Positions 19,202 to 63,214 are shown, counted from the first letter of the stretch. The stretch: 64,000 nucleotides of DNA from IMGVR_UViG_3300022935_000005:62001-126000; one strand, 5' to 3'. Program-made: numbers and translations. The notes: generated by a model not told the origin, from the letters alone.

Positions 19202-19268
19202 ATAATAGTTAATAAAGAATCCACAAGCGTCAAGATTCTGGTAATCGGAAAGTTTTTAGGAGAGCGTA

Positions 19269-19493
19269 ATGCAGGAAAAAGAATCCAATATTTTTGAGAC
19301 AGCAGACTTAGGCCTTGCTGCTTTTCTTTTAGTCAAGGGGTGTCCTCTTTTAGTCGCTGGTCGCGAAAAAAGTAGATTTTCTTTTGTTTTCGAGGGTAAG
19401 TCTGAATGCGAGTCTCTATCAATAAAGTATGTGAATAGCGATTTTGCAAAATTTGATGCATCTCTAAAAAATTTAAAAAATCTTGTTAAATAG
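19269..19493 (+). CDS. Small hypothetical protein (DUF5659-like)
   Basis: 74 aa with AGGAG SD. FETADLGLAAFLLVKG...FSFVFE resembles DUF5659 as recalled; unverified. Confidence 0.5.
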   Translation: MQEKESNIFETADLGLAAFLLVKGCPLLVAGREKSRFSFVFEGKSECESLSIKYVNSDFAKFDASLKNLKNLVK

Positions 19494-19504
19494 ATTTCTT
19501 CTGT

Positions 19505-19511
19505 ATATTTA
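19505..19511 (+). promoter_or_regulatory. Putative phage late promoter ATA[GCT]TTA
   Basis: ATATTTA in an intergenic region; the same heptamer precedes many structural genes (also 19205, 21123). Confidence 0.55.
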
Positions 19512-19623
19512 AAATCGTGAGGTCTCCTCACGTCGTTAGTTTGTATAGTTTCGTTCCTTAGTTAGTTAGTTAGTGAGTTTGTCTAAACATAACTAAGCGC
19601 TTTAAGCGCTCAAAGGAAAAACT

Positions 19624-21030
19624 ATGTCTAGTACACAAATTAGATTACAACAACTTACCGGTTCACTTGCTTCTATTAAGTCCGGAGTGACCGGTGTTTC
19701 TACACAGGGTGCAGCAGCAGCATTCAATGCTGATGACCTTGAGGGTATCCTGAAGTACTACGCTCAGGCTCTTACCAACCTTCACGGTGCCGCTGAGTTC
19801 GGTAACCAGACAATCGGTAAGATTGCTCACGCTACCAACGACATCGTTCTTGAGTCACAAGGTAGCAGCCAGAAGATCTACCTTGACTCAAACTACCAAG
19901 TTCACCTTGCTGCTGCAGGTAGTGCTTCTGATTCGATGAAGATTGATTCTGAGCAGGGTGGTGTTGATATTGACGCCCTCTTGGGTGTTAACATTACTGC
20001 TGATTCTGTAGACTCCGACGCTATCCGTCTCAACGCCACTGCTGGTGGTATTGATATAGATTCTGCTGGAACCTTCTCACTCGTTTCTGCTAACACAACT
20101 GGTGGTAGCTCATCCGTCATCGACGGTGGTGCTTGGCTTGACCTTGAAGCTGATTACTCTGGTGGTGGTCGCATTAACATTGCTGCTAAGCAGTCGGGTG
20201 CTAGTGTTCACCTTAGCGTTAACTCACAAACCCACGCTCAATTCGACGAGAGCTTCTCGACCTTCGCTGTGGTTCCTGTAAAGGTCACAGACTCCTCAGC
20301 TGCTGCTGAATCCGATCAGGGTGCTCTTAGAGTTTCTGGCGGTGCTGGTATCGCCGGTGACCTCCACGTTGGATCAAGCCTCGTTGTTACCGGTTCAGCT
20401 ATGGAGATGGTCAACAGCGCTGCACAACTTCAGTTCGCTGAGGACATCGCGAGAGTCAAGATTGACGGTACCACAATGATTGTAGAGTCTGATGCGGCTC
20501 TCTTCTTGACTGGTACTGGTGGTGCTTCTGTTGTATCTGACCACGCTTCTATGGGTGTTGAGCTCAAGGCTACGCAGGCTGGCTTGTACCTCACCGGTGC
20601 ATCTGGTCTTCATGTCGAGACTGACAGCGGTGCTCACGGTGGTTACAACGGTGCTCTTGCGTTTGCAGCAGGAACCGACGGTGCTACTTTCGAGAGCAAC
20701 TTCCCTGGCTCGTCGCTCCTCGGCGCTATCAACGCTCTTAACGTTAGCTTGACAGGCACTCAGCCTACTCTCATGGAGAACAAGCTCAGTGCTGACGTTT
20801 CTGAGAGCGCTGGTTCTTGGCCAGTTGTCGTTGCTTACGTTGAGGGTGATAACACCACTCTTAGCGGTTGGAACTCGCTCAAGAAGAACGAGCTTGACGT
20901 TTACGTCAACGGTCAACTTCTGCGTTCTGGTTCTAGCGACGACTATGTTCTTAACACAACTACTGGTCAGATTGACTTCAAGTTCGCGATTCTCGCGGAC
21001 GACTTGGTTGTTGCAATCGAGCGTAAGTAA
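19624..21030 (+). CDS. Probably abundant virion structural protein (fibre/decoration-like)
   Basis: 468 aa with AAAGGA SD, its own promoter motif and terminator. Codon usage resembles the major capsid gene (GGT/GCT/CTT/AAC/TTC). C-terminal LDVYVNGQLL...DDY module. Confidence 0.65.
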   Translation: MSSTQIRLQQLTGSLASIKSGVTGVSTQGAAAAFNADDLEGILKYYAQALTNLHGAAEFGNQTIGKIAHATNDIVLESQGSSQKIYLDSNYQVHLAAAGSASDSMKIDSEQGGVDIDALLGVNITADSVDSDAIRLNATAGGIDIDSAGTFSLVSANTTGGSSSVIDGGAWLDLEADYSGGGRINIAAKQSGASVHLSVNSQTHAQFDESFSTFAVVPVKVTDSSAAAESDQGALRVSGGAGIAGDLHVGSSLVVTGSAMEMVNSAAQLQFAEDIARVKIDGTTMIVESDAALFLTGTGGASVVSDHASMGVELKATQAGLYLTGASGLHVETDSGAHGGYNGALAFAAGTDGATFESNFPGSSLLGAINALNVSLTGTQPTLMENKLSADVSESAGSWPVVVAYVEGDNTTLSGWNSLKKNELDVYVNGQLLRSGSSDDYVLNTTTGQIDFKFAILADDLVVAIERK

Positions 21031-21066
21031 TAGCTTACAGCTAGTTAGTTAAAAACTTCGGTTTTT

Positions 21067-21100
21067 CGGGTGGGAGCTTGTCTCCCACCCGTTTTTTTTT
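21067..21100 (+). terminator. Intrinsic terminator
   Basis: CGGGTGGGAG-CTTGT-CTCCCACCCG followed by T9. Confidence 0.92.
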
Positions 21101-21153
21101 GCTTTTTATACTGTTCTAAAAGATAGTTATAATTCAACGTGTAATCTATCTAG

Positions 21154-21684
21154 ATGGAGTTATGTATGGATTTTACAGATGTGATTGATGAAAAGTTGGC
21201 GACTTTAAGAGCTAGTCGGGAGACACTGGAAAAAAATGCTTCTGATTTTATGTTCCACGTACACCGAGTTAACGAGCAACTGTTAGGCGCTATAGAACAG
21301 ATTAATGACCTTGAAGACGATCCAGCGCTGATTAAAGCTGAGTTTGCGTCAGTGATGAAGCAGGTTGCTCCCGTCCTTGTGAGTTCTTGGAACACTGCTC
21401 ACGGTGATCTCGGCGCTCTTGATCAAGAAATAAAACGTTTCGAAGAAATGAGGTCTATGTATGTAGATTGGTCGTTACAAACAGCAGAGCCTGAACAAGA
21501 GAGCGACCTTCTTCCGCAATCTGATATCGTGCAATATGAACCTGATATCGTACAAGGTGTTCTTGACGGAACAATTCCTGAGCCAAGTAAAAACTCCGCG
21601 ATCCGGAGAAAGCCAGGAACACGTCCACCCCTAACCCTCAAGCAATATAGGCAAATACAGGGTGGTGAAGATTCTAGTGAGTAA
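21154..21684 (+). CDS. Hypothetical coiled-coil protein
   Basis: 176-aa ORF, helical N-terminus. ATAGTTA motif upstream at 21123; the start may be a downstream ATG after GGAG. Confidence 0.6.
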   Translation: MELCMDFTDVIDEKLATLRASRETLEKNASDFMFHVHRVNEQLLGAIEQINDLEDDPALIKAEFASVMKQVAPVLVSSWNTAHGDLGALDQEIKRFEEMRSMYVDWSLQTAEPEQESDLLPQSDIVQYEPDIVQGVLDGTIPEPSKNSAIRRKPGTRPPLTLKQYRQIQGGEDSSE

Positions 21685-21690
21685 TACTTA
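21684..21690 (+). promoter_or_regulatory. Putative late promoter ATACTTA
   Basis: Ends 5 nt before ATG 21696. Confidence 0.5.
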
Positions 21691-30560: not shown

Positions 30561-30567
30561 ATATTTA
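30561..30567 (+). promoter_or_regulatory. Putative late promoter ATATTTA
   Basis: Intergenic, upstream of the SD of 30591. Confidence 0.55.
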
Positions 30568-41897: not shown

Positions 41898-41904
41898 ATA
41901 GTTA
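41898..41904 (+). promoter_or_regulatory. Putative late promoter ATAGTTA (portal)
   Basis: Intergenic between terL and portal. Confidence 0.55.
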
Positions 41905-46139: not shown

Positions 46140-46146
46140 ATACTTA
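46140..46146 (+). promoter_or_regulatory. Putative late promoter ATACTTA
   Basis: Intergenic, upstream of 46187. Confidence 0.55.
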
Positions 46147-46186
46147 CAAGATAGACGACAGTCATTCGATCAGGAGGAATACCAAG

Positions 46187-46462: not shown

Positions 46463-46500
46463 TAGTTCTACTTTAACCCAAAAAACTGAGGAGAATCCAA

Positions 46501-46983: not shown

Positions 46984-47567
46984 TGTCAAAGAAGCCTACA
47001 GCAGACTCACCGGGAAGCCTGGGTTATCGGCCCGGGCTTTCTCATGATGGTCGAACAGACTTAGGCTATGCGACGACAAAACAAAAATTTCATGCGCCAC
47101 GACAAAAGGGTTCATCATTCCCTTATGAAGAAGAGCCAGAGTCTCTCGACGACCTTGAAGAGCCGGTCTTAGATTACGAGACATCGAAAAAAATAGATAA
47201 CAAAATCTCTACTCCTTACAATTCCCATGATAGCTTAATAGGTCGCGCTGCTGACTCTTTTTATCTAATTGGCGGAAATTCACGAGTTGCCATCGGGGAA
47301 GCTGTCGCAAAAGGAATGGTACCGTTTCCTGGAATGTATAAAAAAAGACTGCAGGTCGGCGGAGGTGTAAATTCCCCTAAATTAGTCGCCCCGGGTCAAT
47401 ATAATCGTACTGGAACGTACAGAGGTTGGAGCCACTCTCCAATTCCTGCTGATGAGATAATTCATAAAAGTGAAGATGGCTATGCTGAAAGTACAGATGA
47501 AGACAATGTTGAGAGGGTAAGAAGCATTGTTAGATCAATACTTAAAAACAACGCGAGAGAAGCATAG
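46983..47567 (+). CDS. Hypothetical protein
   Basis: Start reassigned to the TAATG overlap at 46983, in frame with the 46965 ORF. Confidence 0.55.
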   Translation: MSKKPTADSPGSLGYRPGLSHDGRTDLGYATTKQKFHAPRQKGSSFPYEEEPESLDDLEEPVLDYETSKKIDNKISTPYNSHDSLIGRAADSFYLIGGNSRVAIGEAVAKGMVPFPGMYKKRLQVGGGVNSPKLVAPGQYNRTGTYRGWSHSPIPADEIIHKSEDGYAESTDEDNVERVRSIVRSILKNNAREA

Positions 47568-47602
47568 TTATCAATGTTTTAGGTTAACTTCAATTTATAT
47601 TG

Positions 47603-47609
47603 ATATTTA
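47603..47609 (+). promoter_or_regulatory. Putative late promoter ATATTTA (scaffold-capsid operon)
   Basis: Intergenic; a second copy, ATAGTTA, is at 47564. Confidence 0.55.
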
Positions 47610-47644
47610 AGGATATGTGTACACACTGTCTGTGAGGTTTTGGA

Positions 47645-49162
47645 ATGTCAACAACGTTGTATAAAGAAGCGATTGCAGAAGCTCAACAGCTAAAAGAGTT
47701 AGCTGAGCAAAATGCAAAGAATAAAATCATAGAGGCTCTGACTCCTCGGATCCAAGCAATGGTAGAATCGCAACTACTGTCTGAACAAGATGATATAGAT
47801 ATTATAGATTCAGATGATGACGATGACGGTCTAATGCCTATGCCCACCCCTGAAATGCTCGTTGTACCTGACGAGGATGACGACGCGGAAATTGAGGCAG
47901 AGGTTGAGGCTAGCGTGGTTATTAACGCTCAGGGTGATGTTAATGTCGCCGTGACCGAGACCGTCAAAAAGAATCTCAAAGACATTAAAGAAGCAATCAA
48001 TAATTCTAACTCTGCGTCTTCCAATAGTAATAAGCTGGCTAACAGAATTGCTAAGCTTCAAGGGAAGGTTAGGAGAATGGATGCATTGTTGGAGAGTATA
48101 GATGCAAGTGCTCTTACTAACCAGCAACGCGCTGTAATCAAAAAGTCATACGAAAAATTGTTGGGGGAAGCCGTAACTTTACGCTCAGAGGCAATAGTTA
48201 TTTCTGAGAGTGAGGGGCAAGGCGTCCGACTTCAGCTGTTCGAAACATTAAAGGAGATGAATAACATGACTAAATCCCGCAGCCGCGCCATCTTCAACCA
48301 ACTATTTGAAGCTGGTTACGGCGAATTAGACGAAATGGAACTAGTTCTCAGTGATGAGGATCTAGAGGCACTTGGTGTTGAAGACGCTGAGGAAGCCGAT
48401 ATCGACGCCCTTGATATTGATATCGCGATGGAGGGTGGAGAAGAAGCCGAAGAAGAAGCCGAAGGTGAAGAAGAAGGCGAAGAAGAAGCAGAAGAAGGAG
48501 GCGAAGAAGAAGTTGAGCTTGACCTTGGAGAAGCTGATCACAAGGACGAACTTGATGAAGTCTTCGAAATCGACCCCGCGATGCTTCGTAACGAAATCCG
48601 TCGACTTCGCTCAATTAGAGAGCAAGCCGAAGAGGAAGCAGATCAATTCGGAGGCGGTGAGGTAGAGCTCGAGGTAATGGAGGTTGATGAGGAAGACCTT
48701 ATTAATGCTCTTGCAGATGAGCTTGGTTCCGTCGCTGATGTAGAGTCCGCTCCAGAGGCAACAGCTGGTCCAGTTGCAGAGCGCCGCCGTAGAACGGCAC
48801 GTCGCCGCACCGGTGCAAATAACGCTGTAGTCCGCGAAAACCGTGAGTTGAAGAAGCAACTCGATGAAATGAATCTTTTTAACGCAAAACTGCTTTATGT
48901 GAATAAGCTGATCCAGAATCGTAATGTGAGTTCTAAGCAGCAGCGTGCCATAGTCGAGGCTCTTGATAATGCCAAGACGGTGAGAGAGGCTAAGTTGGTC
49001 TATGAAGGACTGACCAAGTCACTTAACAAGAAGTCCCTTAGTGAGGGCACGAGAAGAGTTCTTGGATCTTCTAGCAAGCCAACTCGTAGCGGTGGTGCTA
49101 CGTTGAATGAGTCGGCACAGACTGATCGATGGGCTAGACTCGCTGGTATTAAAAGCAAGTAA
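47645..49162 (+). CDS. Prohead scaffolding/core protein (T4 gp22-like)
   Basis: Highly acidic coiled-coil protein immediately before the major capsid gene. Many [LIV]xE sites; C-terminal RWARLAGI. Confidence 0.8.
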   Translation: MSTTLYKEAIAEAQQLKELAEQNAKNKIIEALTPRIQAMVESQLLSEQDDIDIIDSDDDDDGLMPMPTPEMLVVPDEDDDAEIEAEVEASVVINAQGDVNVAVTETVKKNLKDIKEAINNSNSASSNSNKLANRIAKLQGKVRRMDALLESIDASALTNQQRAVIKKSYEKLLGEAVTLRSEAIVISESEGQGVRLQLFETLKEMNNMTKSRSRAIFNQLFEAGYGELDEMELVLSDEDLEALGVEDAEEADIDALDIDIAMEGGEEAEEEAEGEEEGEEEAEEGGEEEVELDLGEADHKDELDEVFEIDPAMLRNEIRRLRSIREQAEEEADQFGGGEVELEVMEVDEEDLINALADELGSVADVESAPEATAGPVAERRRRTARRRTGANNAVVRENRELKKQLDEMNLFNAKLLYVNKLIQNRNVSSKQQRAIVEALDNAKTVREAKLVYEGLTKSLNKKSLSEGTRRVLGSSSKPTRSGGATLNESAQTDRWARLAGIKSK

Positions 49163-49192
49163 TAGACGCTAACATTCAAAGGAGATAATGAA

Positions 49193-51106: not shown

Positions 51107-51132
51107 GTCCTTTAATCTTCGGATTAACTTTA

Positions 51133-51160
51133 GCGGGGTCCCTTCGGGGGCCCCGTTTTT
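51133..51160 (+). terminator. Intrinsic terminator after major capsid gene
   Basis: GCGGGGTCCC-TTCG-GGGGCCCCGT followed by a T tract. Confidence 0.92.
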
Positions 51161-51221
51161 GTTTTAACCTATTTTTGATTCGATTATTATTGATAAAATT
51201 TGCTTTGCAAAGGAGAAACTT

Positions 51222-51542
51222 ATGGCTACTGCAAAAACCTCTTCAACTAGAAAAACGACAAGTTCTTCTAAAACTACTGCGGATTCTACTGTGACCTCTA
51301 CAACTGCTGCTTCAACAGCTTCTACAAGTGACGCAGCTGTTAATGAACTGAAAGCAAGAATTTCGCAACTTGAAGCTCAAATTGAAAACCTTGAGTCGAA
51401 AGTTGCCACAGCTACGGCTCTCGCCAGCTCTGTAAATAATGCCACAGTAACTGACAAAAATGTTGTCGATAAAGCTCTTCTTAGAAGGGCGTTGGAAAGA
51501 ATGGGCATTAGACAGCACGTAATTTCAGGGCTGGGTATATAA
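51222..51542 (+). CDS. Hypothetical protein (T/S/K-rich N-terminus plus coiled coil)
   Basis: 106 aa, AAGGAG SD. Confidence 0.65.
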   Translation: MATAKTSSTRKTTSSSKTTADSTVTSTTAASTASTSDAAVNELKARISQLEAQIENLESKVATATALASSVNNATVTDKNVVDKALLRRALERMGIRQHVISGLGI

Positions 51543-51575
51543 GAGCACCCCGCCGTTTCGATTCATAACTTTCAT

Positions 51576-51606
51576 AAAGACATTTCACCGCCTCGGTGAA
51601 TACTTA
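51576..51606 (+). promoter_or_regulatory. Extended promoter AAAGACATTTC-N11-GAATACTTA (neck operon)
   Basis: Same bipartite layout and spacing as 54784-54814. Confidence 0.6.
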
Positions 51607-51621
51607 AAAAGAGGTGGTGTT

Positions 51622-52788
51622 ATGTCTTCATTTACGTTTACTAGAAATCCTACGCCGTTTGGTTTTTTTGATACAGATGCAGACTTTCAGTCTGAAGCAG
51701 ACTCTGTTGTCACCTTTGTAAAAAGAAAACTAGGCGATGATATTCTTAGTGTCGAGCTGACAAAAAAGCAGATTTGGGCGTGTCTAGAAGAAAGTTTTCT
51801 AGAATACTCTAGAATCATTAACGAAGCCGATGCTAAGTCTCAACTAAATAATCACTTGGGCTATCCCACTGGGAGCGACGTCCAAGGGTTATTCCCTAAG
51901 CAGAACCTTGAATATCTCTTAAGGATGGCCGAACCCTACTCTATGGAGTCGGGAATCGGTGGTTCTTATAACGATGTCAGTGGCTCAATCCAACTGGTGG
52001 AAAACCAGCAAGACTACGATATATACGAGAGCTTGGTGGATGATGCAGGTAACCTGATTGTTTCCAGCAGCGCGAATACTCCAAGGAATAAGATGAGAAT
52101 CAGAGAGGTATTCCACTTTGATCCTCAAGCTGCTTATCGTTTTTTTGATACCACGTCTGCTGTCAATTATCTAAATAACGAGTTTAGCTTTGAGTCATTC
52201 ACACCTGAAACGGTGTTTTATGTACTTCCTGTGTTCGAAGACGTCTTGCGCGCCGGTCAGATGGACATATCAAATAGAGTAAGAAAATCAAACTACTCTT
52301 ATAGGGTCGTCGGAAGTAAGATCAGGATATTCCCACAACCAACAGGGGATATGACTAACAAGAAGCTCTGGATTAGAGTTGCTTTTAATCCCGATCCATA
52401 TAATCCTGACGTCACTGATGAAACAATCTATGGCACGTCGAACCTCTCGAATATCCCATTCGGCTTGTACGAATATAGTAAGGTTAACTCGATGGGCCGC
52501 CAATGGGTCCGACAATACTGCTTAGCGCTCTGTACAGAGTTGTTAGGGCAAGTTCGATCAAAGTTTTCATCTATTCCAATCCCGAACTCTGATTTAACGC
52601 TAAACGGAAGTGATCTGTTAAGCCAGGGACGTGAGGATCAAGCACGTTTACGAGACCAGATGGTAGAGCTCTTAGATAGTTTAACCTACTCTAAACTGCT
52701 AGAAGGACAAGCAACAGACGCAGAAAATATTCTAAGAGCGCTAAAGACTATGCCAATGCCGTTAGGCAAAGCAATACTAATCAAGTAG
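51622..52788 (+). CDS. Neck/head-tail adaptor protein (T4 gp13-like)
   Basis: KRKLG...VELTKKQI and WVRQYCLAL..ELLGQVRSKF...LNG motifs; position after the capsid gene. Confidence 0.8.
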   Translation: MSSFTFTRNPTPFGFFDTDADFQSEADSVVTFVKRKLGDDILSVELTKKQIWACLEESFLEYSRIINEADAKSQLNNHLGYPTGSDVQGLFPKQNLEYLLRMAEPYSMESGIGGSYNDVSGSIQLVENQQDYDIYESLVDDAGNLIVSSSANTPRNKMRIREVFHFDPQAAYRFFDTTSAVNYLNNEFSFESFTPETVFYVLPVFEDVLRAGQMDISNRVRKSNYSYRVVGSKIRIFPQPTGDMTNKKLWIRVAFNPDPYNPDVTDETIYGTSNLSNIPFGLYEYSKVNSMGRQWVRQYCLALCTELLGQVRSKFSSIPIPNSDLTLNGSDLLSQGREDQARLRDQMVELLDSLTYSKLLEGQATDAENILRALKTMPMPLGKAILIK

Positions 52789-54783: not shown

Positions 54784-54814
54784 AAAGACATTTCGCTATC
54801 TCACAGAATAGTTA
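54784..54814 (+). promoter_or_regulatory. Extended promoter AAAGACATTTC-N11-GAATAGTTA (sheath 1)
   Basis: Same bipartite layout and spacing as 51576-51606. Confidence 0.6.
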
Positions 54815-54848: not shown

Positions 54849-57800
54849 ATGGCCGAACAAACATTTAGATCACCCGGTTTTTTCGAGAGAGAGATTGATG
54901 CATCTCAAAGACAGACAGAAATTGTGGGTGTTCCCGCAGGAGTAGTAGGTACCGCCGAGAAGGGTCCCGCTTTCGTTCCTGTTACAGTAGGAAGCACAGC
55001 AGATTTTGTTAACAAGTTTGGAACAGTAGATCCAGAAAGATTTGGACCGTACGCTGTAGATGCATTTCTTTCGAACAGAACTGCTTTGACATACGTTAGA
55101 GTACTGGGTGCTGGCGCGAATGAGACCGCCGCTGATATAACAAATACACAGAACACAGGGACCGTCTTAAACGCCGGGTTTAAAATTGAACCTATTATTT
55201 CTGATTCACCAATGAGTGCATCGGACAGTTCAGTCCAGTTCATCGTTGCGCGTCACGATGTATCCGCGTCAGCAGATTATTCGTTCCCGCAGTTTACAGA
55301 CAACCCTTCATTTGATCCAGGGAACACTGGCGACAAGGTTGACCTTGTTCGTGCTGTTGTTTTAACGGCATCAGGCTCACGCTTACAGGTTCTCGACATC
55401 GGAGAGACTTGGGGCAATGAGCTCGATCAAAACGCTGATCTAAAGAACGATTCAAGCCACGCTGCGAACCTTTGTTTTGCTCTGGCAATTTCGTCTTCGG
55501 CTGGTGCTGCTTTTACTAACGAATACCTTGATCAGGCTGGTGCGGGTGTTAAGATTGTTACTGCTTCGTTGAATCCGACACATCAATCATACATTACCAA
55601 TGTTCTGAATACTGACCCTCTGAAGTTCGCTGAAGAGAAGCACTTGCTATATCTCGACTTCGCGGTTGAAGATGAGTTGGCTTCTGTAGATGTTAACGCA
55701 GCACCAGCTGTAAGTGTCCTGTCAGGATCTAACAACGTGGTTACAACTGCTCTAACTGGCAATGCTGCCAAAGCTTTGAATGCGTTTGGTCGATTCGACA
55801 CAAGGTTTAGAACACCGAAATCACCTGCGATTATTTCACAGCCCTATGGAAAGAAAGAGCACGATTTGTTCCACTTCGAGACGCTTTCAGATGGTGAGTG
55901 GGGTAATGACAAAGTCAAGATCACCATAGCTAATATTAAGGCGTCGACAAACGACAACTACCCTTACCCAAGCTTCGAGGTTCAAGTACGTCGCTTTGAT
56001 GATTCCGATCTTGATCAGCAAGTCTTAGAGGCATTCCCAGGATGTGTCCTTGATCCAGACTCAGATAACTTTATCGGTAAGAAAGTCGGTGACTACAAGG
56101 CACGTTACAACTTCGACGCCACGAACGCGGCTGAAAAGAGAATCATCGTTACCGGTCGTTATCCAAACGTCTCAAATTTCGTGAGAGTTGTTCTTAACGA
56201 TGCAGTCTATAACAAGACCCTTCCAAGAGACGCATGTCCTTTCGGGTTCCGCGGCGTTCCGGTAATCAAGACTTCTGACGCGATGACAGATCGCCTCCAT
56301 ACAGGTCTCGAGCTCGACGGTATAACTTATGGTCAGGCAGGAGCGTCTCTTCAAAGGTTGTGGGGTGCTGATAAGTTAACCACTAGATACGCACTAACCG
56401 GTTCAATCGTTCCTCCGCTACCTCTTCGTTACAAGGTAACGCGTGGTGATGCAAAGGATGGCTGGTTCTCAGGTTTCCCTGGAGAGAAAGAGCTTGTTGA
56501 TAAGCGTCTCAACTGGGGTGTTAAGTACGAGCGTTGTCCAGAAACCGGAAGTATTGCAAACGCGAATCAGAACGTTAACGCTTCTAGCGTTCTCAACCCT
56601 CTAGTCCGTGCGTACTCTAAGTTCCAAGGGCTAGCAGAGATTGGCACTATTCTTACTGGCTCTGGCGCTGATGCCTTTAACGCTAACAAGTTTACTCTTG
56701 CTAGAGTGGTTCTTGCAGGTACTGGCTCTACCGCCTCGACGCTGCTAGACAACCTAACCGGATCCGCTCCAGAACATATGCTTGAAGCTGCGTACATCAG
56801 AAACGGTGTACCGGACTCCAAAGACTACACGATCATGGATCCGGATCTTTCTGATTACGGCAGAATTACTCTAGCGACTCTAATCCAGAGTTCATCAGTG
56901 AAGTTTAACCGCTTCACACCGTACACTGCTTTCAACATTCCAGTATTCGGTGGGTTTGACGGTGTTAATATCTTAGACAAAGATATGAGATACATGAACG
57001 ATAGAGCGGCATCGACAGATGATACCTCGAGCGTTGATGGTCAGATCGGAAAGGCCGCGTCTGGTTTCAGCGCTGGTACAATCGGTCTGAGGTCGAACCC
57101 AGGCGGTACTGGACGAAAGAACAACAGCATTGCTTCTTACAGAGAAGCCGCGACGATTATTACTGATCCCATGTCTACAAGGATTAACATCCTAGCAATT
57201 CCTGGAATCAGGGACTCATATGTCACGGATTGGGCCGCAGAGAGAACGAAGGACTACTCTATGGCTATATACCTCATGGATATTCCTGCGTGGTCTGAAG
57301 CCCAAGCACGTCTATTCCTCACTGAGGACCGCGAAGCTATCGCGTCTGCATCGATTGCGTGGCCTGATGTTAGAGAAACAGCTGAGCAGTTTGAGTCCAG
57401 AGTGTTTGATAATAACTACTCTGCGACGTACTTCCCAGATGTGTACATCACCGACAAGACCACTGGAAGCAGAGTAAGAGTTCCCGCTTCTGTGGCTGCT
57501 ATTGGAGCTTTGGCTTACAACGATTCAGTCGCATACCCGTGGTTCGCTCCGGCAGGTTTCAACAGAGGTGGCCTTGACCAAGTCAAGAACACAGACATTA
57601 GGTTGACGGCTGGTGATAGAGACACGCTATACGACGCAAGGATCAACCCGATTGCAAACTTTGCTGATGGTAGCTTCGTAATCTTCGGTCAAAAGACTTG
57701 CCAGCTCGCTCAAAGCGCGCTTGATAGAGTTAACGTCCGTCGAATGATGCTAGAGTTGAAGCGACAAGTTGTATCCGTTGCCGATAAGATTCTATTTGAG

Positions 57801-58037
57801 CCTAACACTCCTGCGACCAGAGCTCGTTTCGTTAATTCTGTTACACCGCTCCTGGCTACCATACAGTCTCAGCAGGGTATTGAGTCTTTTAGAGTCGTGA
57901 TGGATGATACCAACAATACTCAGGAAGACGTTGAGAACAACAGACTGAACGGTCGCATTGTTGTGGTGCCAACAAGGGCTATCGAATTTATTGCTATAGA
58001 TTTTGTCATTACAAACAGTGGCGTAGACTTCCAGTAG
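54849..58037 (+). CDS. gp18: Tail sheath protein 1 (gp18-like)
   Basis: FRSPGFFEREID, GTAEKGPAFVP, PWFAPAGFNRG, LYDARINPI, FGQKT, ALDRVNVRRM, FEPN and EFIAIDF. Confidence 0.93.
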   Translation: MAEQTFRSPGFFEREIDASQRQTEIVGVPAGVVGTAEKGPAFVPVTVGSTADFVNKFGTVDPERFGPYAVDAFLSNRTALTYVRVLGAGANETAADITNTQNTGTVLNAGFKIEPIISDSPMSASDSSVQFIVARHDVSASADYSFPQFTDNPSFDPGNTGDKVDLVRAVVLTASGSRLQVLDIGETWGNELDQNADLKNDSSHAANLCFALAISSSAGAAFTNEYLDQAGAGVKIVTASLNPTHQSYITNVLNTDPLKFAEEKHLLYLDFAVEDELASVDVNAAPAVSVLSGSNNVVTTALTGNAAKALNAFGRFDTRFRTPKSPAIISQPYGKKEHDLFHFETLSDGEWGNDKVKITIANIKASTNDNYPYPSFEVQVRRFDDSDLDQQVLEAFPGCVLDPDSDNFIGKKVGDYKARYNFDATNAAEKRIIVTGRYPNVSNFVRVVLNDAVYNKTLPRDACPFGFRGVPVIKTSDAMTDRLHTGLELDGITYGQAGASLQRLWGADKLTTRYALTGSIVPPLPLRYKVTRGDAKDGWFSGFPGEKELVDKRLNWGVKYERCPETGSIANANQNVNASSVLNPLVRAYSKFQGLAEIGTILTGSGADAFNANKFTLARVVLAGTGSTASTLLDNLTGSAPEHMLEAAYIRNGVPDSKDYTIMDPDLSDYGRITLATLIQSSSVKFNRFTPYTAFNIPVFGGFDGVNILDKDMRYMNDRAASTDDTSSVDGQIGKAASGFSAGTIGLRSNPGGTGRKNNSIASYREAATIITDPMSTRINILAIPGIRDSYVTDWAAERTKDYSMAIYLMDIPAWSEAQARLFLTEDREAIASASIAWPDVRETAEQFESRVFDNNYSATYFPDVYITDKTTGSRVRVPASVAAIGALAYNDSVAYPWFAPAGFNRGGLDQVKNTDIRLTAGDRDTLYDARINPIANFADGSFVIFGQKTCQLAQSALDRVNVRRMMLELKRQVVSVADKILFEPNTPATRARFVNSVTPLLATIQSQQGIESFRVVMDDTNNTQEDVENNRLNGRIVVVPTRAIEFIAIDFVITNSGVDFQ

Positions 58038-58038
58038 T

Positions 58039-58045
58039 ATAGTTA
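58039..58045 (+). promoter_or_regulatory. Putative late promoter ATAGTTA (sheath 2)
   Basis: Lies in a 34-nt intergenic gap. Confidence 0.55.
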
Positions 58046-58071
58046 AGAAATGAAACAGGAGATTATCAGAA

Positions 58072-61000
58072 ATGGCTGAACTTACCTTTAAAAGTCCGGG
58101 AGTGTCCACTAGAGAGATTGATCTTTCTGGCCCAACCCAAACGGGACCGAGTGGAATTCCTGCTGGTGTAATCGGAACCGCCAAGCAAGGTAGAGCATTT
58201 GTTCCGATCACTGTCGCAACATTTGCCGACTTCATCGCGGAGTTCGGAGATGTAGAGACAACGCTCTTCGCTCCGATGGCAATGAGACAGTGGTTAAGTT
58301 ATGCAAATGCTGGAACTTTCGTTCGAACCCTTGGTGCTGGTGACGGAAAGAAGAGAACCGCAACCGGCGCAGTAACAAACGCTGGGTTCGTTGTTGGGTC
58401 GCAAACTATCCAAACAAACGGTGCTATCGGAAAGAACGGTTATGCTGGATCGACTACAATAAACCCCGGAGCTCTTGGTAGGGCGCACTTCCTGGGTGTC
58501 ATTATGTCTCAATCAAATGGCTCCGATGTGTTCACAGATGCTGGACTTCAAGCTGTACAACCGATTCTCAGAGGTGTTCTCCTGGCACCCTCTGGTGTCA
58601 ACCTTGCGTTGAGCTCTTCAAGATACGAGACCACCAATAACCTTCCGCTGGGTGCACCCACTGCGAACAACTACGCTGCAAATTTCGCGTTCGGCACCGG
58701 CGCGGCCCAAGATGCTGGTTCAACGCTTGGTGCTGTTAACATCGGAGGTGGTCGCCAAGAGTTCGTGATTTTACAGAATGGTCACACTCACACTGACAGC
58801 TATCCAACTGTCATTACAGCGTCTTTTGATGTTGATGCTCCAAATTACTTTGGTAACATTCTAAACACTGATCCTACGAAGACAGAGCTAGCAGGTCACT
58901 GTCTGTATGCTCAATTCAACGTTCCTCCCGCGTTTGCGGTATGCTCAGGCTCATTGCGGATGGTCTCGACCTACAGTGCGTCTTTCGACGGTGTTAAAGA
59001 GGGTGTCACAATAAAGAACGAAGAGATTGCATTCCTCCTGACCGGTTCAGCAGGCAGAAACACAGGGACTACAACGAAGCCGAACTTTGAAGCCTTTACA
59101 GACAGGTTCCGGACTGCAAAGTTCCCGACTATAATTTCACAGGAATTCGGTGGTCAAAACAAAGACTTATTTACCGTTCACTGTCTTGATGATGGAGCGA
59201 TTGGTAACCACCGAGTTAAGATCTCTGTTGAGAACATTGTCAAGTCAACGAACGTAAACAATAAGTACGGCACGTTCGATCTGCTCGTTAGAGATTTCTA
59301 CGATACCGATGCTGAGCCGAAAGTTTTGGAGCGGTTTGTTAAGTTAAGCCTTGATCCTAATAACGAACGGTACATTGCTAGAGTGATTGGTGACTACAAT
59401 ATCTTCTACGATTTTGACAAGCGTGCTGGTGGCCAGAAGCTTGTTGTAGAAGGAAGTTATCCGAATGCTTCGAATTACGTCAGAGTATCTCCGTCAGTAG
59501 ACATGGAGCGTGGCACACTTCCTGCAACTGCTTTACCGGTAGGTTTCCGAGGAGTACCTCACTTGGTGACGTCTGGATCATCTATATTCGCAGATCCAAC
59601 TGCTTATGATGTCACAAGCGTTCTTGATGATGCTGAAGTCGCCGCGCAGCTGGTCCAGCCCCCGGTTCCGATGAGAAGAACTGTCGCTCAAGGTCTTGCG
59701 CCAAGAAAGAGAGTTAACTCATCCCTATACTGGGGTATCCAGCACGAGAAGCTGCAGAGTGTGGCACAGCCCAACTCTTCGACCACACTGGACGCCTCAA
59801 TCGATTCATACGGATTGTACTTCCCGACTTGGGACGTTGTGAACCAAGCAGCAATGGTTGGAGCTAATCCTGGCGTTGCTGATAATGATGGAACAATCTA
59901 CGATTGTGATAGATTCAATAACAACAAGTTCTCACTTGAGAAAATTCAGGTCATCACCAATTCTAGTGACGAAGCCGATGCTCAACAGTGGGCCGCTGCT
60001 ACCTACAGAAGGAAGGGTCTCGCTGAGGCGACAATGAATGACATTGATGGTAGTTCGTCGTCATCTACACGACTGCTTAGCGTAGAGAAAGACTTTGGTC
60101 TCTCGACTGCTCGTCCGTTCCTTAAGTTCACCATGATCGCTCAAGGTGGCTTCGACGGTCTAGACGTCTTCAATGAAGAAAGGGTCAAGATGACCTCTCC
60201 AGCCGTCAGAAGAGAAATGACATATGAGAACCAAGGTCTCATTGCTGGACCTACTGTGGCGGCTTACAGGAAGGCTCTAGATGTTATGGCTGAGAGATCA
60301 GACGTAGACATCCAGTTGTTGGCGATTCCAGGCATTCGTCACAGCGGAGTTACTGATTACGCGATCACAACCGTCGAGAATAGATTTGATGCAATGTACA
60401 TCATGGATATCGAGGTTGAAGACGTTCTTGGTAATATCGTCTCCGGGTCCGATCAAGATGTCAGTGTTACAAACACTGCAGCAACTTTCGCGGCAAGAAA
60501 TCTAGATTCAAGCTTCGCGGCTGCATACTTCCCCGATGTTGTAATGACAGATCAAACATCAGGTGCTGCTTCTTCTGCTCCACCAAGTGTAGCGGTTCTT
60601 GGGGCTTTCGGTCTAAATGACCAAGTTGCCTTCCCATGGTACGCCCCCGCCGGCTTCACCCGCGGCGCTCTGAAGAACGTAGTAGAGACACAGGTCAAGT
60701 TGAACAGAACAAATCTTGATACTCTCTACGAAGTAGACATCAACCCGATTACGTCGTTCCCACAATCACCAGAGGTTGTCGTGTTCGGACAAAAGACTCT
60801 TCTAGCCGCCCAAAGTGCTCTAGACAGAGTTAACGTACGACGACTCTTGATTGATATCCGTCGGCAAGTTAGAAAGATTGGCGATACATTCTTGTTCGAG
60901 CCAAACAGGGAGTCCACGCTGGCAAGGTTCTCAGCAGCGGTTACTCCGGTCTTAACTAGAATTCAACAGCAACAAGGCCTTGAGCGGTTCAAGGTTCAGA

Positions 61001-61134
61001 TCGATACCACAACGACTACTCAAGCTGATATCGAAAACAACACTGTAAGAGGTAAGATCTTCTTGCAGCCAGTACGTTCTGTCGAGTTTATCTCACTCGA
61101 CTTTGTTGTAACGAACGCTGGTTTGGACATATAA
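58072..61134 (+). CDS. gp18: Tail sheath protein 2 (gp18-like paralog)
   Basis: FKSPGVSTREID, PWYAPAGFTRG, INPI, FGQKT, ALDRVNVRRL, FEPN and EFISLDF. Confidence 0.93.
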   Translation: MAELTFKSPGVSTREIDLSGPTQTGPSGIPAGVIGTAKQGRAFVPITVATFADFIAEFGDVETTLFAPMAMRQWLSYANAGTFVRTLGAGDGKKRTATGAVTNAGFVVGSQTIQTNGAIGKNGYAGSTTINPGALGRAHFLGVIMSQSNGSDVFTDAGLQAVQPILRGVLLAPSGVNLALSSSRYETTNNLPLGAPTANNYAANFAFGTGAAQDAGSTLGAVNIGGGRQEFVILQNGHTHTDSYPTVITASFDVDAPNYFGNILNTDPTKTELAGHCLYAQFNVPPAFAVCSGSLRMVSTYSASFDGVKEGVTIKNEEIAFLLTGSAGRNTGTTTKPNFEAFTDRFRTAKFPTIISQEFGGQNKDLFTVHCLDDGAIGNHRVKISVENIVKSTNVNNKYGTFDLLVRDFYDTDAEPKVLERFVKLSLDPNNERYIARVIGDYNIFYDFDKRAGGQKLVVEGSYPNASNYVRVSPSVDMERGTLPATALPVGFRGVPHLVTSGSSIFADPTAYDVTSVLDDAEVAAQLVQPPVPMRRTVAQGLAPRKRVNSSLYWGIQHEKLQSVAQPNSSTTLDASIDSYGLYFPTWDVVNQAAMVGANPGVADNDGTIYDCDRFNNNKFSLEKIQVITNSSDEADAQQWAAATYRRKGLAEATMNDIDGSSSSSTRLLSVEKDFGLSTARPFLKFTMIAQGGFDGLDVFNEERVKMTSPAVRREMTYENQGLIAGPTVAAYRKALDVMAERSDVDIQLLAIPGIRHSGVTDYAITTVENRFDAMYIMDIEVEDVLGNIVSGSDQDVSVTNTAATFAARNLDSSFAAAYFPDVVMTDQTSGAASSAPPSVAVLGAFGLNDQVAFPWYAPAGFTRGALKNVVETQVKLNRTNLDTLYEVDINPITSFPQSPEVVVFGQKTLLAAQSALDRVNVRRLLIDIRRQVRKIGDTFLFEPNRESTLARFSAAVTPVLTRIQQQQGLERFKVQIDTTTTTQADIENNTVRGKIFLQPVRSVEFISLDFVVTNAGLDI

Positions 61135-61146
61135 TCTGAGAACGAT

Positions 61147-61153
61147 ATAGTTA
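61147..61153 (+). promoter_or_regulatory. Putative late promoter ATAGTTA (tail tube)
   Basis: Lies in a 41-nt intergenic gap. Confidence 0.55.
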
Positions 61154-61740: not shown

Positions 61741-61757
61741 ATTTTTATAGGTGAACG

Positions 61758-61786
61758 TTTACACACACTTCGTACTTCTTTAAGAT
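61758..61786 (+). promoter_or_regulatory. Sigma70-like promoter upstream of tail assembly chaperone
   Basis: TTTACA (61758-63), 17-nt spacer, TAAGAT (61781-86). Confidence 0.55.
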
Positions 61787-61829
61787 GTTAATACGTAGTA
61801 TGTACGAATACGAATAACCGGAGCATTAA

Positions 61830-62669
61830 ATGTCAAACGAAAATGAAAGAAGCGAAATCTTTGGTTCCATGAAGGAACATATGCCTACCCATAACGTCAT
61901 GAGAGACGATTTTGGGTTTGAAGTCCCCGTTGAGACCGTTCCGCTCCCGTCTGGCGGTAAGTGCTATGACCAAGATCATCCGCTTCACGGAAAAGAGACG
62001 GTTGAGATTAGAGCAATGACTGCTAGAGAAGAGGATATTCTCACCTCAAAGGCGCTGATTAAGAAAGGTACTGTGATTAGCCATCTGATTAAGTCATGTA
62101 TGATCGACAAAAGAGTTGATCCTGACACACTTTTGGCAGGTGACAGAAACGCTTTGATGGTTGCGCTTAGAGTGACGGGCTACGGCGCAGAGTATAAGGT
62201 GGAAGTTGATTGCCCTGCGTGCAGCGAGAGATCAAAACATTCCTTCAATTTAGGTGAGCTGCCTATTAAGACTCTTGATCTAGATCCTATTGCTGAAGGT
62301 CAAAATGTTTTCGAGACTACGCTACCAGTTACTAAGGCTAAGATTAGGTTCAAGCTTCTAACAGGTCACGATGAGCAGGAGATTATGACGATCTCCGAAC
62401 GTCGTAAGAAACAAGGTCAAAGAGCAGAGAATCTTGTTACACAACGTTTAAAGTACGCCATTGTTTCAGCAAACGGTATTAATGATAAGACAAAGCTCGA
62501 TATGATGGTTAATAACCTCCCAGCTCGTGATTCGTTATTCTTGCGGAAGTTTATCGACAACAACGAGCCTGGCATTGAGATGAAGTCCTGGATGGATTGT
62601 CCTTCATGCCTTGAACATTCGGAGGTGAGGCTGCCTTTAGGCGCCGCGTTTTTTTGGCCTGACGAGTGA
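61830..62669 (+). CDS. Baseplate hub/tail assembly chaperone (T4 gp26-like)
   Basis: VPLPSGGKCY, IRAMTAREEDIL, GDRNALMVALR, CPAC...CPSC, ending FFWP. Lies between tube and tape measure genes. Confidence 0.8.
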   Translation: MSNENERSEIFGSMKEHMPTHNVMRDDFGFEVPVETVPLPSGGKCYDQDHPLHGKETVEIRAMTAREEDILTSKALIKKGTVISHLIKSCMIDKRVDPDTLLAGDRNALMVALRVTGYGAEYKVEVDCPACSERSKHSFNLGELPIKTLDLDPIAEGQNVFETTLPVTKAKIRFKLLTGHDEQEIMTISERRKKQGQRAENLVTQRLKYAIVSANGINDKTKLDMMVNNLPARDSLFLRKFIDNNEPGIEMKSWMDCPSCLEHSEVRLPLGAAFFWPDE

Positions 62670-62910
62670 GAATAAAGAAGTCTATCTAGAGCAGATCTTT
62701 AATCTTATGTATTATATGGGCTTCACGTATGTTGAAGCCTATAACATTCCTATTTGGGTTCGAATATGGATGATAACGAGGCTGAACAAAGAACTTAAGC
62801 GAGCGGGTGATGCTGGTTCTCGAGCCGCTCACCAGAATGATCCTGAGACTCGCGCTCTAATGAGTCGTCACAGGTCACAAGTACCGTCAAAATTGCGTAG
62901 ATTTACATAG
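62650..62910 (+). CDS. gp51-like / GT-type chaperone extension, probably expressed by frameshift from the upstream gene
   Basis: Frame is open from 62641 (after TAG at 62638): FFGLTSENKEVYLEQIFNLMYYMGFTYVEAYNIPIWVRIW. The ATG at 62707 has no SD. Confidence 0.65.
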   Translation, partial: FFGLTSENKEVYLEQIFNLMYYMGFTYVEAYNIPIWVRIWMITRLNKELKRAGDAGSRAAHQNDPETRALMSRHRSQVPSKLRRFT

Positions 62911-62922
62911 TTATAGAATGAG

Positions 62923-63177
62923 GTGAATGATATGCAAAGTGTTAACGATACATTTCTCAGAGATTGTGCTCTTTACGTCAAGGGTGAGATATCAGAAATC
63001 AAGCTAAAGGGTAACAAAGATGCTGTGAACCTTTTTGCGAAAGTTCTATCAGAGTCCCGGCGCTTTTATGTAGCCCTACAGTCTGGTGAGATGAAGGATG
63101 TCATACCACTTCTAGAGAGGAAGAGGGCCGCCTCTAGGGCCCTACGTAAAAAGACAGGTTATGTTTGGCCCCTATGA
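62923..63177 (+). CDS. Hypothetical protein
   Basis: ~82 aa. GAGGTG SD suggests the ATG at 62932 as start. Confidence 0.6.
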   Translation: MNDMQSVNDTFLRDCALYVKGEISEIKLKGNKDAVNLFAKVLSESRRFYVALQSGEMKDVIPLLERKRAASRALRKKTGYVWPL

Positions 63178-63207
63178 TCAAATAAAGGGCGCAGATTCTC
63201 GTTCGTT

Positions 63208-63214
63208 ATATTTA
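63208..63214 (+). promoter_or_regulatory. Putative late promoter ATATTTA (tape measure)
   Basis: Intergenic; another copy, ATAGTTA, is at 62907 before the 62923 gene. Confidence 0.5.

What the first reader, a model, noticed from the sequence alone, without database searches (positions are those of the whole stretch)
19205..63214. Recurring ATA[GCT]TTA heptamer marks most intergenic gaps: a candidate non-T4 late promoter
Seen at 19205, 19505, 21123, 21684, 30561, 41898, 46140, 47564, 47603, 51600, 54808, 58039, 61147, 62907 and 63208. All are on the + strand, usually 5-115 nt before a start codon, and present even in 30-40 nt gaps. Established knowledge: T4 late promoters are a single -10-like element, TATAAATA, read by gp55. 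This motif is analogous but different, implying a phage sigma factor with distinct specificity.
Basis: partly seen in the sequence, partly recalled or inferred. Interest (0 to 1): 0.65.

Follow-up and report, generated by a model that had tools for sequence, protein, structure and literature searches.

The report
Variant T4-type late promoter, ATAnTTA
A seven-base signal, ATAnTTA, sits just upstream of most virion-gene units of an uncultured 281-kb salt-marsh jumbo phage and its many relatives; it is most likely a promoter with only a -10-like element, read by the host RNA polymerase carrying a phage sigma factor related to T4 gp55.

Summary
All 15 heptamers are at the stated coordinates. The count over the whole window is not above chance (28 vs 24.6). 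The window's 1.7 kb of intergenic DNA, however, holds 16 + strand copies against 1.3±1.1 in dinucleotide shuffles. Genome-wide the figures are 45 vs 9.2±3.0.

The core is ATAnTTA. No one-mismatch neighbour is enriched. Intergenic copies are about six times more frequent on the + strand than on the - strand. Inside genes the motif is depleted about two-fold on both strands. There is no -35 partner, and the start codon lies mostly 20-35 nt downstream.

In 80 related contigs (sheath protein 50-100% identical) it is the top non-ribosome-binding-site intergenic word: 290 intergenic + vs 16 intergenic -. It stays in place upstream of orthologues while the flanks drift.

The genome has no detectable RNA polymerase. 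It encodes a gp55-like sigma (PHROG 234; fold match to T4 gp55, Z 10.5) and a separate sigma-70-family factor. Two other promoter classes with TATAAT-type -10 boxes lie outside the virion block.

Best reading: a gp55-type late promoter with altered middle positions (T4: ATAAATA). Start sites and timing are unproven. This is a new variant of a known kind.

The parts
19205..19211 (+). ATAGTTA, 3 nt after the stop of the 538-aa ORF and 57 nt before ATG 19269 (74-aa ORF)
19505..19511 (+). ATATTTA, 112 nt before ATG 19624 (468-aa ORF). A hairpin and a TAGT-rich repeat lie between the motif and the gene.
21123..21129 (+). ATAGTTA, directly behind a strong terminator-like hairpin with a T-run (about 21068-21100) and 24 nt before ATG 21154. 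This is a restart site after termination.
21684..21690 (+). ATACTTA overlapping the stop codon, only 5 nt before ATG 21696. Doubtful as a promoter for that gene.
30561..30567 (+). ATATTTA, 23 nt before ATG 30591. It heads a gap-free run of genes to 41892 that includes RuvC-like, primase, SbcC-like and large terminase genes.
41898..41904 (+). ATAGTTA in a 32-nt gap, 20 nt before the portal gene (ATG 41925)
46140..46146 (+). ATACTTA, 40 nt before ATG 46187. RNA contigs of two runs begin at 46167 and 46179.
47564..47570 (+). ATAGTTA overlapping the end of ORF 46965-47567, 74 nt before ATG 47645. It is the upstream copy of a pair.
47603..47609 (+). ATATTTA, 35 nt before ATG 47645 (505-aa ORF followed by the major head protein, 49193-51106). 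RNA contig cover resumes at 47552-47649 after a hole at 47244-47442.
51600..51606 (+). ATACTTA, 15 nt before ATG 51622 (head-tail adaptor-like). RNA contigs of two runs begin at 51626.
54808..54814 (+). ATAGTTA, 34 nt before tail sheath gene 1 (ATG 54849)
58039..58045 (+). ATAGTTA in a 34-nt gap, 26 nt before tail sheath gene 2 (ATG 58072). It is invariant in all relatives with 60% or more sheath identity, while the flanking bases vary.
61147..61153 (+). ATAGTTA in a 41-nt gap, 22 nt before the tail tube gene (ATG 61176)
62907..62913 (+). ATAGTTA overlapping the end of ORF 62707-62910, 9 nt before GTG 62923 (18 nt before ATG 62932). Weak candidate.
63208..63214 (+). ATATTTA, 39 nt before ATG 63254 (1472-aa ORF running out of the window)
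61791..61797 (+). ATACGTA, an ATAnnTA variant, 32 nt before the baseplate hub gene (ATG 61830), behind a terminator-like hairpin. Possible weak variant site, inferred only from the variants seen in relatives.
51132..51157 (+). Intrinsic-terminator-like hairpin with a T-run after the major head protein gene. RNA contig cover drops to zero in two runs at 51025-51223. It marks the end of the unit started at 47603.

Best explanation
ATAnTTA is the promoter of the virion-gene (late) transcription class of this jumbo myovirus. It has a single -10-like element and no -35 box, and it lies about 20-35 nt before the start codon. That would place a start site a few bases downstream and leave a short leader carrying the ribosome-binding site.

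The host RNA polymerase core reads it when it carries a phage sigma factor related to T4 gp55 (244 aa, genome 54037-54771, just upstream of the window). The element is the T4 late-promoter type (core ATAAATA) with the fifth position changed to T and the fourth position free.

Shown:
- the motif's specificity, strand bias, position and conservation;
- its avoidance inside genes;
- the sigma gene;
- the lack of any detectable phage polymerase.

Inferred:
- that it is a promoter;
- that this sigma, rather than the phage's sigma-70-family factor, reads it;
- that it acts late.

A likely cascade, also inferred: early promoters (aaTCGTGCAaa-N14-TGtGGTATAAT) express the sigma-70-family factor. TGTA[AC]A-N14-18-TATAAT promoters serve the block that holds the gp55-like gene. 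ATAnTTA then drives the virion genes.
For: 1. Enrichment. Intergenic + strand copies number 16 vs 1.3±1.1 in the window and 45 vs 9.2±3.0 genome-wide, against shuffles of the same intergenic DNA. 45 of 75 + strand copies lie in the 8% of the genome that is non-coding.
2. Specificity. The T4 word ATAAATA has 4.
3. Orientation. There are 45 intergenic + copies vs 8 intergenic - copies, and 374 of 383 genes are on the + strand.
4. Avoidance in genes on both strands. Observed/expected is 0.52 on the sense strand and 0.47 on the antisense strand under synonymous-codon shuffles. Neighbours average 0.86±0.17. This fits a DNA-level signal.
5. Conservation. In 80 related loci (1.04 Mb) there are 290 intergenic + copies vs 16 intergenic - and 203 coding + copies, with only 38 kb of intergenic DNA. 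ATAGTTA is the top enriched intergenic 7-mer in the 60-81% identity group (71 intergenic vs 11 coding). It stays in register upstream of sheath-2 orthologues.
6. Anatomy. 211 unique sites carry no flanking or -35 information. Distance to the start codon peaks at 20-35 nt.
7. Restart sites. The motif follows terminator-like hairpins in the window (21123) and in relatives.
8. No alternative promoter type in the block. Sigma-70-type sites are not enriched in window 45-64 kb (20 vs 22.8). No promoter of either TATAAT class was found between genome 50 and 138 kb.
9. Sigma gene. The only PHROG hit is the gp55 family, phrog_234, at E 2.5e-6. The AlphaFold model (pLDDT 78) aligns to T4 gp55 in 7d7d_F at Z 10.5, rmsd 5.4 Å, over 124 of 137 residues. 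The gene is conserved in 4 of 5 large related contigs.
10. No phage polymerase. There is no RNA polymerase beta or T7-type match and no DFDGD-type catalytic motif.
11. RNA. Salt-marsh metatranscriptome contigs begin 20-45 nt after the motifs at 46140 and 51600 and near 47564/47603. Cover is lost after the head-protein terminator.
Against: - No start sites and no time course exist. The RNA data are contigs, which cannot fix 5' ends, and two contigs start 10-25 nt upstream of the expected start near 47564.
- The gp55 assignment rests on one profile hit and a fold tie with ordinary sigma region 2 (S. aureus SigB, Z 10.8, rmsd 2.6 Å, 91 residues). BLASTP, hhalign and a profile search of PDB sequences against T4 gp55 were not significant. 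phrog_234 also rings weakly in 8 of 14 control genomes.
- Unlike T4 gp55, the protein carries a region-4-like C-terminal domain, yet no -35 element is seen.
- The genome has two further sigma-related genes.
- No gp45 clamp was found, and gp33 was not searched for in the genome; only the sigma's own C-terminal part was compared with T4 gp33, without result.
- The motif also precedes genes outside the virion block, including some in the region rich in early promoters. Most of these genes have no assignable function.
- 5 of the 17 larger window gaps lack the exact motif.
Confidence: 0.65

Rival explanations
1. ATAnTTA is a promoter, but it is read by the phage's sigma-70-family factor (252 aa, genome 184883-185641; regions 1.2, 2, 3 and 4) rather than by the gp55-like protein.
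For: It is a clear sigma factor: Sigma70_r2 scores 72 bits, with r1.2, r3 and r4 also matched. It is conserved in 4 of 5 large related contigs. It is expressed from an early-type promoter directly upstream, so it could switch on a later class.
Against: It has region 4, and factors of this kind normally need a -35 box. ATAnTTA sites have none. The genome has two promoter classes with distinct -35-region words and TATAAT-type -10 boxes. These fit a host sigma plus this factor better. ATAnTTA resembles the gp55 element ATAAATA, not TATAAT.
Confidence: 0.15
2. The heptamer acts in the RNA, as a processing site, a stability element or a translation element in the leader, and not as a promoter.
For: It is strand-specific and lies at a short, fairly regular distance upstream of start codons. 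Several sites lie inside apparently continuous operons with gaps of only 30-40 nt.
Against: The motif is avoided inside genes on the antisense strand as much as on the sense strand. It recurs right after terminator-like hairpins, where a new transcript must start. Without it, the 80-kb virion block would have no recognisable promoter of any type. Spacing to the ribosome-binding site is not fixed.
Confidence: 0.08
3. The motif is a chance by-product of AT-rich intergenic composition or of stop-codon contexts.
For: The whole-window count is not above chance. Some copies overlap stop codons (21684, 47564, 62907).
Against: Shuffles of the intergenic DNA itself give 1.3 vs 16 observed in the window and 9.2 vs 45 genome-wide. 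Neighbouring words are not enriched. There is 18-fold strand asymmetry and positional conservation in relatives with only about 50% protein identity.
Confidence: 0.02

Closest known systems
Bacteriophage T4 late promoters (TATAAATA) read by gp55 with gp33 and the gp45 sliding clamp
   Same: Both are a single A/T-rich -10-like element without a -35 box, lying in front of virion genes of a myovirus with T4-type portal, head protein, protease, sheath, tube and baseplate genes. Six of the seven core positions are identical (ATAAATA vs ATAnTTA). A gp55-family sigma is encoded. The host polymerase is used.
   Different: The fifth base is T instead of A, and the fourth base is free. The T4 word itself is not enriched here (4 intergenic copies). 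The sigma is 244 aa, not 185 aa, and carries a region-4-like C-terminal domain. No gp45-type clamp was found. gp33 was not searched for in the genome; the sigma's C-terminal part shows no significant likeness to T4 gp33.
Rak2-like jumbo phages CBB and GAP32: predicted late motif ATAAATA with a gp55-like sigma and no gp33/gp45 (PMC5259590)
   Same: These are jumbo myoviruses in which a short T4-like element precedes structural genes. A gp55-like factor is present, and T4's co-activator and clamp are not detected.
   Different: Those phages keep the T4 word ATAAATA. This clade uses ATAnTTA. The head protein is only about 32% identical.
T4-like cyanophage late promoters (a T4-like consensus, as cited in PMC3184105)
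   Same: They are a variant of the T4 late consensus in distant T4-like phages that have gp55.
   Different: The cyanophage variant differs at the first base only and keeps the AAATA part. Here the change lies inside the core.
Phage sigma cascades such as Bacillus phage SPO1 (host sigma A, then gp28, then gp33/34)
   Same: Several promoter classes and more than one phage sigma gene lie in one genome, with a sigma gene directly behind an early promoter.
   Different: SPO1 late promoters have -35 and -10 parts. The cascade here is inferred from gene and promoter positions only.

Membership tests
T4-type (gp55-dependent) late promoter | A single -10-like element with no -35 element | tested here: met
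   211 unique sites from the phage family carry no information outside the heptamer. The same holds for the 45 sites in this genome.
T4-type (gp55-dependent) late promoter | Consensus TATAAATA | tested here: not met
   ATAAATA has 4 intergenic + copies vs 12 coding copies. ATAnTTA has 50 intergenic copies. There is one fixed mismatch and one free position. ATAAATA-type words appear only at some orthologous sites in the most distant relatives.
T4-type (gp55-dependent) late promoter | A gp55-family sigma factor encoded by the phage | tested here: met
   phrog_234 at E 2.5e-6 is the only PHROG hit. The fold matches T4 gp55 (7d7d_F) at Z 10.5, rmsd 5.4 Å, 124 of 137 residues, tied with cellular sigma region 2. 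Pairwise and hhalign comparisons were not significant.
T4-type (gp55-dependent) late promoter | gp45 sliding clamp and gp33 co-activator | tested here: inconclusive
   There is no match to phrog_223, PF02916 or PF02768. hhalign of the sigma family against T4 gp33 was not significant, and gp33 itself was not searched for in the genome. The sigma has a conserved C-terminal D[LI]F tail. Folded against the E. coli beta clamp it gave weak support only. Divergent proteins could have been missed.
T4-type (gp55-dependent) late promoter | Transcription starts a few bases downstream of the element | not testable with these tools
   Only assembled metatranscriptome contigs were available. Their ends are compatible but imprecise.
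T4-type (gp55-dependent) late promoter | Late timing and dependence on DNA replication | not testable with these tools
   There is no cultured host and no time course. Late timing is inferred from the virion genes downstream.
Sigma-70-type promoter (host housekeeping sigma) | TTGACA-N17-TATAAT-like pair of hexamers | tested here: not met
   Such sites are not enriched in window 45-64 kb: 20 vs 22.8±4.2. The genome's TATAAT-type classes lie elsewhere.
Promoters of phage-encoded RNA polymerases (phiKZ/AR9 multisubunit type, T7/N4 single-subunit type) | A phage-encoded RNA polymerase | tested here: not met
   PF00562 gave no match, with controls positive. PF00940 gave no match, with controls silent. 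No DFDGD-type motif occurs in any predicted protein. The 2209-aa and 2417-aa ORFs have no family match, so a cryptic enzyme is not strictly excluded.

The most novel reading that the evidence does not exclude
This large family of uncultured jumbo phages runs a three-step sigma cascade. Its last step uses a fused sigma: a gp55-like region 2 joined to a region-4-like domain that takes over the flap-binding role of T4 gp33. This sigma reads a -10-only ATAnTTA promoter. Through its conserved C-terminal (V/I)D(L/I)F tail it is tethered to the host beta sliding clamp. That would be T4-style coupling of late transcription to replication without any phage clamp or co-activator.
Probability: 0.15. Interest if true: 0.7.

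Novelty: new variant of a known kind. Interest (0 to 1): 0.55.

Why it matters
It gives a usable promoter rule, ATAnTTA on the coding strand 20-35 nt before a start codon. With it, transcription units can be annotated in a widespread family of jumbo phages that has no cultured member (361 related contigs, 2453 homologues of the sigma). The rule marks the virion genes among mostly unknown ORFs.

It also shows that the gp55-type late-promoter system reaches far beyond the classical T4-like phages. Its recognition word has drifted at defined positions (the family-wide pattern is ATAnnTA). That offers natural sigma/promoter pairs for working out how gp55-type factors read DNA.

The unusual build of the sigma and the apparent lack of gp45 raise a testable question: how is late transcription activated in these phages?

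Tried and rejected
- Megablast of window 40-64 kb against phage records found no match.
- Most window proteins have no PHROG or Pfam family.
- phmmer with T4 gp44, gp45, gp46, gp47, gp55, gp62 and RpbA against all predicted proteins gave no hit at E ≤ 10, so it was too insensitive to be informative.
- BLASTP and hhalign of the sigma family against T4 gp55 were not significant. hhalign against T4 gp33 was not significant either.
- A profile search of PDB sequences found nothing.
- Foldseek against PDB gave only weak rows (best E 0.02), though all were sigma factors.
- Searches for a phage clamp (phrog_223, PF02916, PF02768) and for a second gp55-type PHROG (phrog_12791) were negative.
- Literature searches for ATATTTA or ATAGTTA as phage promoters found nothing relevant.
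- A conserved -35 or extended flank was looked for and rejected.
- I considered that the strand bias merely reflects codon usage. This is rejected because coding-strand copies are depleted, not enriched.
- Annotating genes behind motif copies outside the window gave mostly unknowns, so late status could not be extended there.
Full report
**What the window is.** The window is bases 62001-126000 of a 280,913-bp linear virus record with 45% G+C. 374 of its 383 predicted genes are on the + strand. It encodes a T4-type virion module:
- large terminase (40294), portal (41925), prohead protease (44703) and major head protein (49193);
- two tandem giant sheath genes (54849 and 58072) and a tail tube gene (61176);
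- a baseplate hub gene (61830).

No close relative exists among deposited phages. The nearest head proteins are 36-51% identical: Microcystis phage Mel-JY01, uncultured megaphages, Flavobacterium phage immuto and Rhodothermus phage RM378. The DNA comes from salt-marsh metagenomes.

**The observation.**
- Over the whole window the word is not over-represented: 28 vs 24.6±5.3.
- 26 of the 28 copies are on the + strand, and the listed ones fall in the gaps between genes.
- Shuffling only the intergenic DNA (dinucleotide-preserving) gives 1.3±1.1 copies against 16 observed in the window. Genome-wide it gives 9.2±3.0 against 45.
- 45 of the 75 + strand copies lie in the 8% of the genome that is non-coding. 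Only 8 copies lie on the opposite strand of the same gaps.
- 12 of the window's 17 gaps of 30 nt or more carry the motif.

**Specificity.** The fourth base is free: ATAATTA is also enriched, at 5 intergenic vs 3 coding copies. Each of the six fixed bases matters. None of the single-mismatch neighbours tested exceeds 6 intergenic copies, against 23 for ATATTTA and 11 each for ATAGTTA and ATACTTA. The T4 word ATAAATA has 4.

Inside genes the motif is depleted about two-fold on both strands relative to synonymous-codon shuffles (0.52 sense, 0.47 antisense). This is the lowest combined sense-plus-antisense depletion among its neighbours, which average 0.86±0.17 (one neighbour, CTANTTA, is as low on the sense strand alone). 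Avoidance on the antisense strand points to a DNA-level signal rather than an RNA-level one.

**Conservation.** A sheath-2 query found 361 related virus contigs, of which 80 were fetched.
- In these 1.04 Mb, ATAnTTA occurs 290 times on the coding strand of the 38 kb of intergenic DNA. It occurs 16 times on the other strand of that DNA and 203 times in the roughly 1 Mb of coding sequence.
- ATAGTTA is the most enriched intergenic heptamer in relatives with 60-81% sheath identity (71 intergenic vs 11 coding).
- The four ATAnTTA words are the most enriched non-Shine-Dalgarno words in the group with about 50% identity.
- Upstream of sheath-2 orthologues the heptamer is invariant and in register in all closer relatives, while neighbouring bases change. 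The most distant relatives show ATAnnTA forms there, including ATAAATA, ATAAGTA and ATACGTA. Elsewhere they still mostly use ATAnTTA.
- Across 211 unique sites there is no information outside the heptamer, and so no -35 box. The distance from the motif end to the start codon peaks at 20-35 nt.

**Other promoter classes.** K-mer enrichment revealed two further classes, both outside the virion block.
- The first is aaTCGTGCAaa-N14-TGtGGTATAAT, with an extended -10 box, followed by an ATGTTGGT hairpin. It lies at genome 0.8-6.3 kb, at 185 kb and at 222-274 kb.
- The second is TGTA[AC]A-N14-18-TAnn[AT]T, with 25 intergenic + copies, 6 coding + copies and 2 intergenic - copies.
- No site of either class was found between genome 50 and 138 kb, a span that holds 18 ATAnTTA sites.
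- Generic sigma-70-type sites are not enriched in window 45-64 kb: 20 vs 22.8.

Without ATAnTTA, the virion block would have no recognisable promoter.

**What could read it.**
- *No phage polymerase.* The genome has no match to RNA polymerase beta (controls positive) or to T7-type polymerase (controls silent). No predicted protein has a DFDGD-type catalytic motif. The two giant ORFs (2209 and 2417 aa) match no family. They lie in a unit headed by a baseplate wedge gene.
- *A gp55-like sigma.* A 244-aa ORF at genome 54037-54771 hits only the gp55 PHROG, phrog_234, at E 2.5e-6. It scores a mere 12.9 bits on Pfam Sigma70_r2.
- *Its fold.* The AlphaFold model (mean pLDDT 78) aligns to T4 gp55 in the gp45-dependent activation complex (7d7d_F) at Z 10.5, rmsd 5.4 Å, over 124 of 137 residues. 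This ties with region 2 of S. aureus SigB (Z 10.8, rmsd 2.6 Å, 91 residues). Residues 155-240 resemble sigma region 4 (Z 5-6).
- *Its spread.* The family has 2453 homologues and is present in 4 of 5 large related contigs.
- *Its tail.* The family ends in a conserved D[LI]F tail. T4 gp55 and gp33 end in clamp-binding LDFL motifs. No gp45 or DnaN-type clamp was found in the phage.
- *Clamp test.* Residues 196-244 were folded against the E. coli beta clamp dimer. The verdict was weak support: score 0.38, best control 0.00. The mark was reached by 51 of 78 solved complexes and 2 of 108 mismatched pairs. At scores of 0.60 or under, only 5 of those 78 solved complexes reached it, as did all 4 mismatches that passed. 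The runs agree in at least 86% of contacts, and the partner's pLDDT is at least 57. I treat clamp tethering as a hypothesis only.

**Other sigma-related genes.**
- A typical sigma-70-family factor (252 aa; regions 1.2, 2, 3 and 4) sits at genome 184883-185641, directly behind an early-type promoter. It is conserved in relatives.
- A 329-aa protein with a region-4 helix-turn-helix sits at 175172-176161, behind an ATAnTTA site.
- The gp55-like gene lies in a block served by TGTAAA-type promoters, immediately before the ATAnTTA-driven virion block begins at 57305.

The simplest assignment gives one reader to each class. The host sigma and the phage sigma-70-family factor read the two TATAAT classes, which differ in their -35 regions. 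The gp55-like factor reads ATAnTTA. This assignment is inference.

**RNA evidence.** Eleven salt-marsh metatranscriptome runs hold the region. Contigs of four of them were laid on window 46050-52000.
- Cover has holes at 47244-47442 and at 51025-51223. The second hole lies behind the head-protein terminator at 51132-51157.
- Contigs begin at 46167 and 46179 (motif at 46140).
- Contigs begin at 47552, 47566 and 47649 (motifs at 47564 and 47603).
- In two runs contigs begin at 51626 (motif at 51600).

Contigs cannot fix transcript ends, so this is compatible with the promoter reading but not proof of it.

**Comparison with known systems.** T4 late promoters are a lone TATAAATA read by gp55, with gp33 and the gp45 clamp (established knowledge; see also PMC3184105). 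Rak2-like jumbo phages CBB and GAP32 have ATAAATA before structural genes, a gp55-like factor, and no detectable gp33 or gp45 (PMC5259590). The present element shares the architecture and six of the seven core bases, but it has a different fixed fifth base and a free fourth base. Its sigma is longer and has two domains. No paper in the searched library describes ATAnTTA as a phage promoter.

**Verdict.**
- That ATAnTTA is a real, conserved, oriented upstream signal: about 0.95.
- That it is a promoter: about 0.8.
- That the gp55-like factor reads it, and that it acts late: about 0.6-0.7.

It is a new variant of the T4/gp55 late-promoter kind, in a large uncultured jumbo-phage family.

Noticed in passing
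outside the window: genome 813-6336, 184797, 222802-273799 (window coordinates would be negative or above 64000): A strong early-type promoter class, aaTCGTGCAaa-N14-TGtGGTATAAT. It is often followed by a conserved ATGTTGGT...ACCAAC hairpin in the leader. It is clustered in the regions of small ORFs at both ends of the record.
   Followed up: partly
outside the window: genome 4296, 45816-50293, 138408-278324: A third promoter class, TGTA[AC]A-N14-18-TAtAAT, with 25 intergenic + copies, 6 coding + copies and 2 intergenic - copies. It also serves the block that holds the gp55-like gene and the tRNA region at about 210-216 kb.
   Followed up: partly
outside the window: genome 184883-185641 (L083:1387-2145) and 175172-176161 (L092): Two more sigma-related genes. 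One is a sigma-70-family factor with regions 1.2, 2, 3 and 4, directly behind an early promoter and next to a Cpn60-like gene. The other is a 329-aa protein with a region-4 helix-turn-helix, behind an ATAnTTA site.
   Followed up: partly
window 3678-17585: Two adjacent giant ORFs (2209 and 2417 aa) with no PHROG match. They lie in a unit that starts at a baseplate wedge gene upstream of the window and are probably virion proteins.
   Followed up: partly
window 54849-61134: Two tandem paralogous tail sheath genes of unusual size (1062 and 1020 aa), each with its own ATAGTTA site. Only the C-terminal 100-290 residues match known sheath domains.
   Followed up: no
window 49193-51106: The major head protein is 637 aa. 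The T4 gp23-type PHROG matches best over residues 377-620, so there is a long extra N-terminal part. This gene has the deepest cover in the salt-marsh RNA contigs.
   Followed up: no
outside the window: genome 190090-191265 (L093): A 391-aa protein behind an ATAnTTA site has a weak Tubulin/FtsZ GTPase-domain match (E 7e-5, below the Pfam cut-off). It is a possible phage tubulin in a phage that is not phiKZ-like.
   Followed up: no
window 19494-19623: This 130-nt gap has a hairpin (GTGAGGTCTCCTCAC) right after the motif, a TAGT-rich repeat run (TTAGTTAGTTAGTTAGTGAGTT) and a GCGCTTTAAGCGC palindrome. Its function is unknown.
   Followed up: no
window 51107-51221: The gene at 51222 follows the strong head-protein terminator with no exact motif. 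Only ATTATTA at 51183 is present. Yet RNA contigs of two runs begin at 51224, so another start signal may exist here.
   Followed up: no
L002:1429-2163 (genome 54037-54771), residues 196-204 and 238-244: The gp55-like family has an invariant internal LDFLNKRA stretch, which recalls the LDFL clamp-binding ends of T4 gp55 and gp33. It also has a conserved C-terminal D[LI]F tail.
   Followed up: partly
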